Source: Macrostomum lignano
Taxonomy: Eukaryota
Length of the DNA stretch: 64,000 nt
NCBI GenBank assembly: GCA_002269645.1
Contig: NIVC01000666.1
Location: 186,001 to 250,000, forward strand
Reading direction: 5' to 3'
The translations under genes and the position numbers were made by a program. Below are positions 35,501-38,500 of this stretch, one piece after another. The notes below the pieces were generated by a model. It ran no database searches, was not told where the DNA came from, and saw only the letters and a list, made by a program, of their open reading frames with translations. Position 1 is the first letter of the stretch. Each line of letters opens with the position of its first letter.

Positions 35501-38500
35501 ATAACTGTTTGCCCTATCATGGATCTCTAGCAAACAAACTGATAGCAGACAAAATGACCCATAACCACTGTTAGTATAGGCTGAATTGGAATCAGGAAAT
35601 AATTTTATTAAATGTGCAATTTGTATTTAACTACAATGCATTGTACTACTACTACTACTACTACTACTACTACTACTACTACTACTACTACTACTACTAC
35701 TACTACTACTACTACTACTACTACTACTACTACTACTACTACTACTACTACTACTACTACTACTACTAATACTAATACTAATACTAATACTAATACTACT
35801 ACTAATACTACTACTACTACTACTACTACTACTACTACTACTACTACTACTACTACTACTACTACTACTACTACTACTACTACTACTACTACTACTACTA
35901 CTACTACTACTACTACTACTACTATATTAAAATTACTATTGCTATTACTACGAGGGGTGTCCCAGAAGTAGTGTCTCTTTTGCTTGCTTCCACAAGTATT
36001 AATTTGTGATAAAAAATCATATGCCTTAAAAGTTAGCGGCTTATTTTAGCTTTCATGCCACGCAAATCCGATCTTTATAAGTGCTTCCTGCTGTAAGAAG
36101 CATGCATTTGTTCGCATACCCTTGGCCATAGAAATACACACCGCATAGTGCTTCTATGCTCACTCAGAAGGAAGCCACAAGTACAGCTGATCAAGCACAG
36201 AGTTGCAAGACAGCAGCTGCAAGATTTGTTCCAGTCATGGACCCTAACATTCACCCTACAGAAAAGCAGAGACACACAATTTTTACACTCTGGAGTCTTG
36301 GTCAGAAATGCCCTGAAATTCACGAAAACCTGACCCGCATTCACCGTCCCGATGCCATTGGTCGACGAGCGGTTTGCAGGTGGATCGAGCAGTTCGAGGC
36401 TGGCTGAAGATGTTAAAGGCCGACCACTTTTGGGTAAGTTAACAACACTGCCGGCCAGCTTCGAACTGTTCGATCCGCCTGTGGGCCGTTCGTCGACTGG
36501 TGGCGTCGGGACGGTGAATGCGGGTACTATACCAGTCTCATTAACATTTAACAAAAATCCTATTTAAACTGCGATTCCTGACGCCAGGAGCGGCTCCGCC
36601 TAGTGACTATATTCGGCGCCGGCCTTCTAGTTGGCACGGCGCTCTCCGTCATCATCCCGGAGGGTGTGCACGCAATATACGATGCTCCCGGTGCTGCCTC
36701 TCGCGGCGGTGGCAGCGGCGGCGACCCACCGGGGCATCTGCTGCTGTCCGCAAAAGACGTCCTGCCTCACCACGCCGATTCAGCGGCTGCCGGCGCCGCG
36801 GCCGCTGTGGCCGGAGGTGGCAAGCGGCTCATCCAGGCTGTGGCGGCTCCGCAGGCTGCGGCCGCTGCGGGCCCTGGCGCTGCCGGGTCGGCGTCGGGCG
36901 GCGCTGCCGCTGCCGCTGCCGCCGCGGCTGCCGGCTCAGCTGGCGCGCATCACGACGCCGAGGGATGGCTTGACGAGCATCAGGTGAGCTATTGATACCT
37001 GGGATCAGTTACTGGTGATGCTGTGGATAGATGACTGATGATACCTGGGATAGATGACTGATGATACCTGGGATAGATAATTGAGTGATACCTGGGATAG
37101 ATGACTGATGATACCTGGGATAGATGACTGGTGATTTTTTTATTAGAGGCAGGGGGGTTGTGTGCACCCTGGCGCACTTTAAGCGACATAGGCACACAAC
37201 CGGCGAGAGGCATTACTGCCCATTCCGCTGACTCCCCTGAGCAGGCATACAAGCGCGCGGATACGTACGCAGGCACACACTCACACAGGAGTGTACAGCG
37301 GCCCTGACTTTATTTATCGTTAGGCATGTACACTTCACTGCGCCTTGGGGGGTTGACACTCAAGGCCGTTAATTGCACGAGCAGAGCCAAGCCGAGATTC
37401 CAATTTAGCCCCAAATTAATGTGACTGCACTTGGAATCGAGCCTGGGTCGCTGGCACACCAGAGCAGCTGCGCTACCGCTGGGCTACGGCCCCCGATGAC
37501 TGATGATACCTGGCATAGATGATTGAGTGATACCTGGGATAGATGATTGAGTGATACCTGGGATAGATGATTGAGTGATACCTGTGATAGATAATTGAGT
37601 GATACCTGGGATAGATGATTGAGTGATACCTGTGATAGATAATTGAGTGATACCTGGGATAGATGATTGAGTGATACCTGTGATAGATAATTGAGTGATA
37701 CCTGGGATAGATGATTGAGTGATACCTGAGATAGATGACTGATGATGCCTGGGATAGATGATTGAGTGATACCTGGGATAGATGATTGAGTGATACCTGA
37801 GATAGATGACTGATGATACCTGGGATAGATGATTGAGTGATACCTGGAATAGATTATTGAGTGTTATCTGGGATAGATAATTGGCGATACCTGGGATAGA
37901 TGATTCAGTGATACCTGGGATAGATGATTATTTGGTGATACCTGGGATAGATGATTGAATGATACTTGGGATAGATGATTAAGTGATACCTGGGAGACAT
38001 TGGGACATAAAAATGATGACTTGAGACACCGTGGAGCAGCTAAACACAGGGTTCGAGACGTATCCGCCCGCCCCAACAATCCGCAGGTGATTGGCCTAAC
38101 CCTAGTCCTTGGCTTCGTATTCATGCTGCTAATTGACCAGCTGGGCGGCTCCACCTCGCATCGCCGCCGGGTCTCGGACTTGTCGGACTCCCGGCCGGGC
38201 TTCACAGCCTCTCTTGGCCTCATCGTTCACGCCGCCGCCGACGGCATCGCTCTGGGCGCGGCTGCGTCCACCTCGCACATGCGAGTGGAACTCATCGTAT
38301 TCGTGGCCGTCATGCTGCACAAGGGCCCGGCCGCGTTCGGCTTGACCTCCTTCCTGCTGCACGACGGCTTTGACAGGAATCGGATTAAACGGCATCTGCT
38401 GGCTTTCTCTCTGGCTGCTCCAGTTCTGGCATTGGTCACTTATCTGTGCCTTAATCAGGTCGGCTTTTGGGGCTTTAATCTATTGTATTATAGAGCCTTT

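What the first reader, a model, noticed from the sequence alone, without database searches (positions are those of the whole stretch)
36333..36525. ADAR-like A-to-G hyper-editing signature apparently fixed in genomic DNA of a mariner fold-back hairpin
Seen: 36333-36406 pairs with 36452-36525 over 74 bp with no gap and no mismatch except 13 transitions, all giving G.U on the + strand (ZIP9 pre-mRNA and mariner sense) and none giving A.C; by hand, chance is about 2^-13 if strand-neutral. Inference on direction: a mariner-like HTH (I-S-R-R-T-V-Y-R-W) is rebuilt only by taking the A/T allele, in either arm, at the informative sites, so the changes read as A-to-G on the + strand in both arms. Under that reading, conversion by 5' neighbour is U 4/4, A 6/8, C 3/9, G 0/12 (hand-calculated p about 4e-4 for 0/12). 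Established: U>A>C>G is the 5' neighbour preference of ADAR on long dsRNA. CpG decay would hit both strands, and many CpGs here are intact. Possible mechanisms: retro-insertion of an edited hairpin RNA, repair templated by edited RNA, deamination of DNA in R-loops or cruciforms, or selection for a hairpin-RNA/siRNA precursor against mariner. Any of these would be an unusual transposon-inactivation route.
Basis: partly seen in the sequence, partly recalled or inferred. Interest (0 to 1): 0.88.

Follow-up and report, generated by a model that had tools for sequence, protein, structure and literature searches.

The report
Sense-strand A-to-G hypermutated transposon hairpin
A 74-bp hairpin made from a broken mariner transposon inside an intron of an animal ZIP9 gene differs between its two arms only by changes that look like the work of the RNA-editing enzyme ADAR, yet they are written in the DNA sequence; if raw DNA reads confirm it, this would be a rare trace of RNA-type editing passing into a germline genome.

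Summary
Arms 36333-36406 and 36452-36525 pair over 74 nt without gaps. All 13 mismatches are G.T on the + strand, with no A.C and no transversion. The + strand is the sense strand of both the mariner remnant and ZIP9, and the hairpin lies in ZIP9 intron 1, 56 nt before exon 2.

Local background substitution is not like this (about 43% transversions, no A>G excess), so chance is about 1e-7.

No close copy of this mariner family was found, so direction was inferred from Pfam profiles and distant homologues. Five of seven amino-acid-changing sites favour the A/T allele under the Mos1 HTH profile; two are neutral there. One site (36405/36453) goes the other way and is best read as a CpG C>T making a TGA stop.

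Read as A>G, conversion by 5' neighbour is U 4/4, A 6/8, C 3/9, G 0/12. Without assuming direction, p is 0.0003-0.007. CpG decay, APOBEC, RIP and a pol-eta-like spectrum do not fit. Near-saturation at WA sites with intact CpGs points to an enzymatic burst, which argues against slow selection.

So the ADAR-like signature is supported. How, or whether, it entered germline DNA is untested. An RNA-contaminated assembly remains a live rival.

The parts
35949..35976 (+). TA dinucleotide plus presumed 5' terminal inverted repeat of the mariner remnant (CGAGGGGTGTCCCAGAAGTAGTGTC). No matching 3' repeat exists anywhere in the window.
   Evidence: sequence; the motif is unique in the window on both strands with up to 3 mismatches. 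The assignment as a terminal repeat rests on resemblance to mariner ends recalled from memory and was not tested.
36237..36407 (+). Remnant of the mariner transposase N-terminus: 56 codons, [56 protein letters not shown], then TGA.
   Evidence: translation. Pfam HTH_48, 29.1 bits, above the 24.1 cut-off; six distant homologues at 33-50% identity.
36333..36406 (+). Left arm of the fold-back, in mariner sense. Five G of G.T pairs: 36360, 36369, 36376, 36389, 36398. Eight T of G.T pairs: 36353, 36358, 36359, 36373, 36374, 36375, 36381, 36405.
   Evidence: In this arm, under the A>G reading, 5 of 5 WA adenines are converted and 0 of 12 SA adenines (p = 1.6e-4).
36405..36405 (+). The exception site. 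T here makes TGA; its partner 36453 is G, so the right arm reads CGA (Arg). Best read as C>T at a CpG in the left arm and not as A>G.
   Evidence: homologues have R (4 of 6) or G (2 of 6) at this position.
36407..36451 (+). 45-nt loop. Its first part continues the mariner reading frame after a frameshift (DVKGRP, 36408-36425). It also contains a GGTAAGT splice-donor-like heptamer at 36433-36439.
   Evidence: frame 3 translation; alignment to homologues, G-R-x-D-V...GRP.
36452..36525 (-). Right arm: an inverted copy of 36333-36406, so mariner sense is on the - strand. On the + strand it carries eight G of G.T pairs: 36453, 36477, 36483-36485, 36499, 36500, 36505.
   Evidence: Sites 36500, 36485, 36483 and 36477 are polarised as A>G on the + strand, because homologues and Pfam require I/V, V, Y/C/F and W there.
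32562..32672 (+). tblastn match containing ZIP9 exon 1 ([32 protein letters not shown]); the match runs a little past the exon's end.
   Evidence: tblastn with a human ZIP9 sequence recalled from memory; ORF.
36582..36982 (+). ZIP9 exon 2. Its acceptor AG is 56 nt downstream of the hairpin, so the hairpin lies in intron 1 and is transcribed in sense with the host gene.

Best explanation
A truncated mariner copy in ZIP9 intron 1 acquired a 74-bp inverted duplication of its own HTH-coding segment. This most likely happened in a DNA break-repair event with fold-back (snap-back) synthesis that also removed the 3' part of the element.

The sense transcript of this young, initially perfect palindrome forms a long duplex. 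Twelve adenines on the + strand, five in the left arm and seven in the right, were then converted to G by an ADAR-type adenosine deamination. One further change (36405) is an ordinary CpG C>T.

The conversions are now in the DNA sequence. The most likely route is copying of a hyper-edited sense transcript back into the locus, by RNA-templated repair or cDNA conversion at a break-prone palindrome. A second possible route is ADAR deamination of deoxyadenosine in the non-template strand while it is hybridised to sense RNA of the opposite arm.

Shown: the anatomy, the strand, the spectrum, the context, partial polarity and the young age. Inferred: the enzyme, the route into DNA and the repair origin of the fold-back.
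For: 1. Spectrum. There are 13 of 13 G.T-type transitions with no A.C, no transversion and no indel. A dispersed repeat pair in the same window gives GT 5, AC 4, transversions 8 and 15 gap positions (Fisher p = 8.7e-5). Minisatellite variants in the ZIP9 region give A>G 8, T>C 10, C>T 13, G>A 16 and transversions 36. So there is no general + strand A>G bias.

2. Polarity. HTH_48 scores are 35.5 bits for the A/T alleles, 29.1 and 26.7 for the arms, and 21.2 for the G/C alleles. HTH_23, HTH_29 and HTH_28 rank them the same way. Per-site HTH_48 losses are W>R 6.5, S>G 3.7, T>A 3.1, I>T 2.1 and V>A 1.1 bits; Y>C and Y>H are about 0. All six homologues have W and a hydrophobic or aromatic residue at the T-allele sites. 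Two cyanobacterial IS630-like proteins read ISRPTVYRWIEQFE and ISRPTIYRWIEQFE. That search was seeded with the A/T version, so it is biased.

3. Context. The 5' neighbour counts are U 4/4, A 6/8, C 3/9, G 0/12. The left arm alone gives WA 5/5 and SA 0/12. The right arm gives G 0/5. Polarity-free simulations give p = 0.0003-0.007. The log-likelihood is -10.2, against -23.6 for wobble misincorporation. The order matches ADAR preferences, including on DNA in DNA/RNA hybrids: TAG 94%, AAG 81%, CAC 53%, AAT 43%, GAA 27%, GAC 19% (PMC5389660).

4. Extent. 13 of 33 adenines (39%) are converted, as in hyper-edited long duplexes. In an avian retrovirus inverted repeat, nearly 50% of A became G in proviral DNA (PMC12925331).

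5. Burst. 10 of 12 WA sites are converted, while all 8 CpGs of the left arm have a CpG partner in the right arm. CpG observed/expected is 1.13 and 1.40 in the arms, against 0.59 for the window and 0.06 for the rest of intron 1. The upstream 32 codons are still open.

6. The + strand is the sense strand of the host gene and folds into a perfect helix.

7. Plausible routes exist in the literature: Pol theta reverse-transcribes RNA and supports RNA-templated repair (PMC8195485), full-length ADAR2 edits dA in long matched hybrids (PMC5389660), and fold-back inverted insertions form at breaks (PMC11724301, PMC5728401).
Against: - This is one locus.
- No close relative or second copy of the family was found, so five synonymous sites are unpolarised. 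Polarity of the three left-arm coding sites rests on profile scores of 0 to 4 bits each.
- Distant homologues P0004 (VGRKAVCRW) and P0001 (VGLATVCRW) resemble the present left arm, so a left-arm-ancestral reading is not excluded.
- One site runs opposite to the rule.
- No hallmark of reverse transcription is present: no poly(A) and no retroelement ORF in intron 1.
- No germline RNA-to-DNA transfer of ADAR edits is established for non-retroelement DNA.
- dI in DNA is normally repaired.
- Ordinary R-loops would put ADAR on the template strand, giving the opposite asymmetry.
- Transcription, ADAR presence in this unidentified animal, and the DNA reads themselves could not be checked.
- No priming microhomology is visible at the inner edge of the repeat.
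Confidence: 0.45

Rival explanations
1. Technical origin. The genomic DNA is a perfect palindrome. The G's entered the assembly from hyper-edited RNA, through RNA-seq or Iso-Seq reads used for polishing, gap filling or scaffolding, or through cDNA contamination.
For: It explains an exact ADAR signature without any new biology. The site is 56 nt from an exon, where unspliced pre-mRNA reads are most likely to reach.
Against: Most assemblies are not polished with RNA. The window resolves kilobase-scale minisatellites and introns, typical of long-read DNA assembly. All 12 sites would need majority editing in the reads used. The CpG C>T at 36405, which makes a stop codon, is not an editing product. 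Nothing in the sequence can test this.
Confidence: 0.15
2. Selection for an RNA hairpin. The stem is a functional RNA: a small-RNA precursor against mariner, or a splicing element next to the exon 2 acceptor. Only wobble-forming transitions are tolerated, so ordinary mutations are filtered down to G.U.
For: It predicts exactly G.U-only differences without indels on the transcribed strand. One change (36405) is indeed C>U. The hairpin sits 56 nt from a splice acceptor.
Against: - It predicts no 5'-neighbour rule (p = 0.0003-0.007).
- It predicts mostly C>U, because G-C pairs are more numerous and C>T is more frequent locally. Instead 7 of 8 polarisable sites are A>G (p about 6e-4 to 0.035).
- 10 of 12 WA sites being converted would need several substitutions per site of elapsed time. 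Yet the CpGs are intact in a CpG-depleted intron and the flanking ORF is still open.
- There is no Rfam match.
Confidence: 0.15
3. Error-prone fold-back synthesis. The right arm was copied from the left arm by a low-fidelity polymerase during snap-back repair. The 13 differences are G.T and T.G wobble misinsertions frozen in place. The left arm is ancestral.
For: G.T is the commonest polymerase mispair. The right arm ends exactly at the junction with flanking DNA. Fold-back inverted insertions at breaks are documented (PMC11724301, PMC5728401). The left-arm residues G, A and C occur together in distant homologue P0004.
Against: - It needs misinsertion at 8 of 16 template T and 5 of 25 template G. 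From general knowledge, this is far above reported error rates of repair polymerases, apart from pol iota opposite T.
- It has no explanation for the context rule (R-only null p = 0.007; lnL -23.6 against -10.2).
- The left arm carries the TGA stop.
- Pfam profiles prefer S, T (and Y) over the left arm's G, A, C by 6 to 9 bits.
Confidence: 0.1
4. Cytosine deamination on the + strand: methyl-CpG decay, APOBEC/AID-type editing or RIP-like mutation. All 13 changes would then be C>T.
For: Under this reading 7 of 13 sites are CpG. One site (36405) probably is a CpG C>T.
Against: - The G/C reconstruction (ATGRRAARRR) loses the conserved V and W and scores 21.2 bits, below the HTH_48 cut-off.
- CpG sites are not enriched: 7/26 against 6/28.
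- TpC is 0/11, which argues against APOBEC3. CpA is 0/6, which argues against RIP.
- No CpG>CpA change occurs on the + strand.
Confidence: 0.03
5. Strand-biased DNA-level adenine mutagenesis without ADAR: pol-eta-type WA mutagenesis in repair patches, or transcription-associated A>G asymmetry.
For: The WA motif and the bias to the non-transcribed strand resemble pol-eta-dependent hypermutation (general knowledge; discussed in PMC11817618).
Against: From general knowledge, pol-eta spectra at A include roughly half transversions, whereas 12 of 12 here are A>G (p = 2.4e-4). Per-pass error rates are far below the 83% conversion seen at WA sites. No general A>G excess appears in the same transcription unit.
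Confidence: 0.05

Closest known systems
ADAR hyper-editing of long inverted-repeat dsRNA in introns and UTRs (for example paired Alu or other TE copies)
   Same: - Only A>G, on the transcribed strand and in both arms of a long, nearly perfect intramolecular duplex made of TE sequence inside a host-gene intron.
- 5' neighbour order U, A > C > G.
- About 40% of adenines affected.
   Different: Editing is by definition an RNA-DNA difference. Here the G's are in the DNA sequence itself, and the arms, not RNA against DNA, carry the signal.
A>G hypermutated avian retrovirus proviruses (Rous-associated virus U3; avian leukosis virus inverted repeat), as summarised in PMC12925331
   Same: ADAR-type conversion of nearly half the adenines in an inverted-repeat region of an RNA, then found in DNA.
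   Different: Those genomes pass through reverse transcription at every cycle. Here the substrate is a DNA-transposon remnant in a cellular intron, with no reverse transcriptase signature nearby.
RNA-to-DNA write-back proposals: deaminase-plus-reverse-transcription model (PMC11817618), Pol theta RNA-templated repair (PMC8195485), ADAR acting on DNA/RNA hybrids (PMC5389660, PMC8448848)
   Same: They provide enzymes and contexts by which an ADAR signature could reach DNA, and they predict bias to the sense strand and WA-type context.
   Different: They are shown in vitro or in somatic or cancer cells, or remain contested. None is shown to leave germline footprints at palindromes.
Fold-back (snap-back) templated inverted insertions at double-strand breaks (SD-MMEJ, Pol theta end joining; PMC5728401, PMC2943611, PMC11724301)
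   Same: An inverted copy of nearby sequence sits exactly at a deletion junction. The right arm ends at the flank, which starts with TA, the mariner target dinucleotide.
   Different: Reported insertions are mostly a few to about 34 bp, whereas this one is 74 bp with a 45-nt spacer. No priming microhomology is visible next to the repeat.
Hairpin-RNA and inverted-duplication small-RNA loci
   Same: A long TE-derived stem on the transcribed strand with G.U but no A.C pairs.
   Different: No conservation, small-RNA or Rfam evidence. The context rule and near-saturation of conversion are not expected from selection.

Membership tests
ADAR hyper-editing cluster | All changes are A>G on one strand (the transcribed one) | tested here: inconclusive
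   All 13 are G.T on the sense strand. Five of the seven amino-acid-changing sites favour A>G under HTH_48 and two are neutral there. Five sites are synonymous and unpolarised. One site (36405) is probably C>T.
ADAR hyper-editing cluster | Substrate is a long, nearly perfect intramolecular RNA duplex | tested here: met
   A 74-bp uninterrupted helix in + strand RNA, -161 kcal/mol, z = -16.5. It would have been perfect Watson-Crick before the changes.
ADAR hyper-editing cluster | 5' neighbour preference U, A > C > G | tested here: met
   U 4/4, A 6/8, C 3/9, G 0/12. The rule holds in each arm. p = 3.6e-4 with polarity assumed and 0.0003-0.007 without.
ADAR hyper-editing cluster | Up to about half of the adenines converted in a long duplex | tested here: met
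   13 of 33 (39%), or 12 of 32 without site 36453. The comparison value of nearly 50% is from PMC12925331.
ADAR hyper-editing cluster | G is seen in RNA while genomic DNA keeps A | not testable with these tools
   Only the assembled sequence is available, and it carries G. No reads or RNA data.
ADAR hyper-editing cluster | Host encodes an active ADAR and transcribes the locus | not testable with these tools
   The window is from an animal (An_peroxidase plus EGF, PLAC8 and Sleeping Beauty-type Tc1 domains), but the species is absent from the collections.
Mariner (Tc1/mariner superfamily) element | Transposase with an N-terminal Mos1-type HTH | tested here: met
   HTH_48 at 29.1 bits for the present left arm, above the 24.1 cut-off.
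Mariner (Tc1/mariner superfamily) element | Two terminal inverted repeats flanked by TA, and a DDD/DDE catalytic domain | tested here: not met
   Only one candidate end exists. The ORF stops after 56 codons and the rest of the element is missing. It is a 5' remnant and not an element.
CpG decay / APOBEC / RIP-type C>T mutation of repeats | C>T direction with CpG, TpC or CpA context | tested here: not met
   The direction is contradicted at the W, V and I sites. Contexts are CpG 7/26 against non-CpG 6/28, TpC 0/11 and CpA 0/6.
Structured functional RNA (miRNA or hairpin-RNA precursor) | Match to a known family, or conservation with compensatory changes | tested here: inconclusive
   No Rfam match above E = 0.18, and that match is far below its gathering score. 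No orthologous or paralogous copies are available for covariation.
Fold-back templated insertion at a repaired break | Inverted copy of adjacent sequence at a deletion junction, primed from microhomology | tested here: inconclusive
   The inverted copy ends at the junction with the TA flank. Only a 4-bp TGTT/AACA pairing lies inside the loop, not adjacent to the repeat.

The most novel reading that the evidence does not exclude
Edits made by ADAR on a sense-strand hairpin transcript (or on the non-template DNA strand paired with that transcript) are written into germline DNA at transcribed palindromes. This would be a directional, sequence-specific mutational process. It would erode TE-derived long duplexes by turning A-U pairs into G.U, and it would be a natural case of RNA-level editing information reaching the genome outside retroelements.
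Probability: 0.3. Interest if true: 0.92.

Novelty: new variant of a known kind. Interest (0 to 1): 0.7.

Why it matters
ADAR footprints in DNA are accepted only for genomes that replicate through reverse transcription. Write-back of RNA edits into cellular DNA has been proposed for decades (the deaminase plus reverse transcription models). It remains contested because natural, cleanly polarised examples are lacking.

A young palindrome carries its own internal reference, since each arm reports the ancestral state of the other. That makes the question directly testable. The same arm-against-arm test can be run on every transcribed inverted repeat of this and other genomes, scored against host-gene strand and 5' neighbour.

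If the bias is general, it would define a new germline mutational process. It would also be a new way in which long TE-derived dsRNA is defused. If DNA reads show A, the locus instead flags RNA contamination of an assembly, which is also worth knowing.

Tried and rejected
Searches that found no usable relative:
- Second copy of the element in the window: none.
- Word-indexed protein search with all four allele versions: none.
- Full HMMER scan of 1.8 billion representatives: only five distant hits from metagenomes.
- Profile search with the alignment: one more distant hit.
- Metagenome contig scans by peptide patterns and by a degenerate stem pattern: nothing.
- Viral contigs: nothing.
- Prokaryotic genomes: only two IS630-like HTH matches.

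Orthologous ZIP9 intron from sister species: impossible. The best ZIP9 relatives are 58-63% identical, and exact look-ups of two window ORFs are not on record.

Explanations rejected:
- General transcription-associated A>G bias, by minisatellite variant spectra and a dispersed inverted repeat pair.
- CpG decay, APOBEC and RIP, by context and polarity.
- Pol-eta-like mutagenesis, by the absence of A>T and A>C changes.
- 'Hardwiring' of edited sites by ordinary mutation plus selection, because 10 of 12 WA sites converted implies saturation while CpGs and the flanking ORF are intact.
- GC-biased gene conversion and G.T-specific glycosylase repair of an extruded hairpin. Both were considered and dropped: neither removes transversions, and neither leaves one-strand wobble pairs.
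- Retro-insertion: there is no poly(A) and no retroelement ORF in intron 1.

Also checked without result:
- Rfam: no family.
- Other inverted repeats in the window: 540 pairs, dominated by microsatellites. After complexity filtering only this hairpin, one dispersed pair and two short pairs remain.
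Full report
**1. What is there**

Positions 36333-36406 and 36452-36525 are reverse complements over 74 nt, without gaps. 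They differ at 13 positions. At every one the + strand has T in one arm and G in the other. As + strand RNA the stem is therefore an unbroken 74-bp helix with 13 G.U pairs (-161 kcal/mol, z = -16.5). The - strand RNA has 13 A.C mismatches (-125 kcal/mol). There are no transversions and no A.C pairs. Pairing ends abruptly at both borders, and the loop is 45 nt.

**2. Context**

The left arm is part of an open 56-codon remnant that starts at ATG 36237: [56 protein letters not shown], then a stop. It matches Pfam HTH_48, the Mos1-type mariner HTH.

After a frameshift the mariner frame continues into the loop (DVKGRP), as in distant homologues. A candidate 5' terminal repeat preceded by TA lies at 35949-35976. 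No 3' end, no catalytic domain and no second copy exist in the window. The right arm is an inverted copy of the HTH segment and ends exactly where flanking DNA resumes with TA.

ZIP9 is on the + strand. Exon 1 lies within the tblastn match 32562-32672, exon 2 is 36582-36982, exon 3 about 38030-38458 and exon 4 39810-40079 (with a human sequence recalled from memory; Zip domain). The hairpin is therefore in intron 1, in sense, 56 nt upstream of the exon 2 acceptor.

Neighbouring genes show that the window is from an animal: PLAC8, a Sleeping Beauty-type Tc1, a COX-like An_peroxidase plus EGF gene, Ras, Mito_carr, PX and Pex2_Pex12. The species is not in the collections. The best ZIP9 identity is 58-63%, and two window ORFs are not on record.

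**3. Is it more than chance?**

Strand symmetry alone gives 2^-13. I also measured the local background in two ways.

| Source | G.T-type | A.C-type | Transversions | Other |
|---|---|---|---|---|
| Hairpin arms | 13 | 0 | 0 | no gaps |
| Dispersed inverted repeat pair, 24658-24983 vs 37139-37455 | 5 | 4 | 8 | 15 gap positions |

Distinct variants in four minisatellite arrays of the ZIP9 region are A>G 8, T>C 10, C>T 13, G>A 16 and transversions 36.

So the region has no general + strand A>G bias, and about 43% of its substitutions are transversions. Against that spectrum, 13 of 13 wobble-type changes on one strand has p of about 1.5e-7. Fisher's test against the dispersed repeat gives 8.7e-5. 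After low-complexity filtering this is the only local hairpin in the window.

**4. Direction of the changes**

No family consensus could be built. Only six distant relatives exist, at 33-50% identity. Polarity therefore rests on protein evidence.

HTH_48 scores for the four versions:

| Version | Bits |
|---|---|
| A/T alleles | 35.5 |
| Left arm as it stands | 29.1 |
| Right arm as it stands | 26.7 |
| G/C alleles | 21.2 (below the 24.1 cut-off) |

Three general HTH profiles rank them the same way.

Single-site flips from the A/T version cost the following in HTH_48:

| Change | Cost in bits |
|---|---|
| W>R | 6.5 |
| S>G | 3.7 |
| T>A | 3.1 |
| I>T | 2.1 |
| V>A | 1.1 |
| Y>C, Y>H | about 0 |

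Y is preferred over C by the other three profiles. All six homologues have W at site 48. Five of the six have V at site 40, and P0126 has T. They have I, V or M at site 25 and Y, C or F at sites 42/43. They are split at the S/G and T/A/S positions.

Two cyanobacterial IS630-like proteins read ISRPTVYRWIEQFE and ISRPTIYRWIEQFE, nearly the A/T reconstruction. That search was seeded with the A/T version and is biased.

Taken together:
- Four right-arm sites (36500, 36485, 36483, 36477) are firmly A>G on the + strand.
- Two left-arm sites (36360, 36369) are probably A>G.
- One site (36376) is weakly A>G.
- Five sites are synonymous and unknown.
- The last site contradicts the rule. The A/T allele at 36405 gives TGA where homologues have Arg (4 of 6) or Gly. 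It is best read as C>T at a CpG.

The all-C>T reading is rejected.

**5. Context**

Read as A>G, conversion by 5' neighbour is U 4/4, A 6/8, C 3/9, G 0/12 (hypergeometric p = 3.6e-4).

It holds in each arm separately:
- Left arm: WA 5/5 and SA 0/12 (p = 1.6e-4).
- Right arm: U 2/2, A 3/5, C 3/4, G 0/5.

This test assumes polarity, so I also simulated random wobble-forming transitions on three alternative ancestors and a right-arm-only model. The probability of no 5' G together with at least 10 of 13 5' A/U is 0.0003-0.007.

The order matches ADAR preferences, which also hold for deoxyadenosine in DNA/RNA hybrids: TAG 94%, AAG 81%, CAC 53%, AAT 43%, GAA 27%, GAC 19% (PMC5389660).

Read as C>T, no known signature appears. 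CpG is 7/26 against non-CpG 6/28, TpC is 0/11 and CpA is 0/6.

**6. Burst or slow accumulation?**

Ten of twelve WA adenines are converted, which is near saturation. Yet all eight CpGs of the left arm keep their CpG partner in the right arm. CpG observed/expected is 1.13 and 1.40 in the arms, against 0.59 for the window, 0.40 for the upstream mariner part and 0.06 for the rest of intron 1. The 32 codons upstream of the stem are still open and recognisable.

The duplication is therefore young in neutral terms, and the A>G changes arrived in great excess over background. This argues against two slow models:
- Slow filtering by selection for RNA pairing. That model would also predict mostly C>U changes and no context rule.
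- Gradual 'hardwiring' of edited sites by ordinary mutation.

**7. Other rivals**

*Error-prone snap-back synthesis.* In this model the right arm is copied from the left with G.T misinsertions. It explains the one-strand wobble pattern and the position of the right arm at the junction. It has four problems:
- It needs about 50% error at template T and 20% at template G.
- It fits the data much worse once context is considered (lnL -23.6 against -10.2).
- It makes the stop-bearing left arm ancestral.
- It is disfavoured by 6 to 9 bits of profile score.

*Pol-eta-type WA mutagenesis.* From general knowledge, this would give many A>T and A>C changes, whereas 12 of 12 here are A>G (p = 2.4e-4).

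*Assembly artefact.* Hyper-edited RNA reads used in polishing would reproduce everything except the 36405 change. This cannot be tested here.

**8. Most likely mechanism**

Shown:
- A young TE-derived palindrome lies in sense within a host intron.
- It carries a sense-strand, A-specific, context-dependent, near-saturating conversion in both arms.

Inferred:
- The fold-back arose by break repair with fold-back synthesis, which deleted the 3' part of the mariner. Such events are documented (PMC11724301, PMC5728401, PMC2943611), although usually shorter.
- The conversions are ADAR-type deaminations.
- They reached DNA by one of two routes.
  - Route 1: copying of a hyper-edited sense transcript into the locus. 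Pol theta can reverse-transcribe RNA and support RNA-templated repair (PMC8195485). The precedent for ADAR footprints in DNA is the avian retrovirus inverted repeat, with nearly 50% A>G (PMC12925331).
  - Route 2: ADAR acting on the non-template DNA strand while it is paired with sense RNA of the opposite arm. That geometry is available only at inverted repeats and gives the observed strand. This route is my own inference, based on PMC5389660.

I found no hallmark of reverse transcription near the locus.

**9. Verdict**

Uniform direction is not supported for one site and is unproven for five. Fixation in germline DNA and the route into it remain open.

Relative to known systems this is a new variant: ADAR-type hypermutation recorded in DNA outside a retroelement. 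It would matter because it turns an old, contested idea into a simple genome-wide test. Interest 0.7.

Noticed in passing
window 35920-35926 and 36525-36531; also TA at 35949-35950 and 36525-36526: A 7-nt direct repeat TACTATA brackets a 598-bp block (35927-36524) holding the mariner remnant and the fold-back. Alternatively, TA dinucleotides flank the presumed mariner end and the right arm. Either could be a target-site duplication. The left copy abuts a (TAC)n array, so chance is not negligible.
   Followed up: partly
window 36433-36439: The hairpin loop contains GGTAAGT, a consensus-like 5' splice donor on the ZIP9 sense strand, 143 nt upstream of the exon 2 acceptor. Possible cryptic exonisation of the mariner ORF remnant was not examined.
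   Followed up: no
window 21819-23094 (- strand): A Tc1 element of the Sleeping Beauty type with two long ORFs (219 aa with HTH_SB and HTH_Tnp_Tc3_2; 203 aa with DDE_3), abutting at 22431-22434. It looks nearly intact, with perhaps one interruption.
   Followed up: partly
window 24658-24983 and 37139-37455: A dispersed repeat of about 325 bp is present in inverted orientation 12 kb apart at 90% identity, with a normal mixed substitution spectrum (GT 5, AC 4, 8 transversions, indels). One copy lies in ZIP9 intron 2. It was used as a background control, and the family was not identified.
   Followed up: partly
window 35569-35925, 36993-37135, 37495-37995, 38521-39698, 40225-41169, 43502-43835 and many others: There is an extreme density of micro- and minisatellites in introns and intergenic DNA, for example about 120 TAC units and arrays of 23, 24, 32 and 42 bp with up to 51 copies. 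Most long 'ORFs' in the window are translated repeats.
   Followed up: partly
window 36690-36960 (ZIP9 exon 2): Exon 2 encodes a long Ala/Gly-rich, GC-rich (73%) insertion in the cytoplasmic loop, where the human protein (as recalled) has a short His-rich stretch. It includes imperfect GCN repeats and local inverted repeats.
   Followed up: no
window 32700-35560: The rest of ZIP9 intron 1 is 30% G+C with CpG observed/expected 0.06, far below the window mean of 0.59. The hairpin arms are at 1.1-1.4. This is a very sharp compositional and CpG contrast over a few hundred bases.
   Followed up: partly
window 3300-3804 and 11130-11690 (+ strand): Two PLAC8-family coding regions with very similar Cys-rich C-termini lie 8 kb apart, apparently a tandem gene duplicate. 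The first is fused in the ORF listing to a translated minisatellite.
   Followed up: no
window 56100-59710 (- strand): Exons of a cyclooxygenase-like gene (EGF-like domain followed by an animal haem peroxidase domain). This supports an animal origin for the window.
   Followed up: partly
L002 329-400; L003 3001-3072: Cyanobacterial IS630-like transposase genes (Caldora and Microseira assemblies) encode ISRPTVYRWIEQFE and ISRPTIYRWIEQFE. These match 12 and 11 of the 14 residues of the reconstructed ancestral mariner helix (ISRRTVYRWIEQFE), an unusually close match across domains of life for this short motif.
   Followed up: partly
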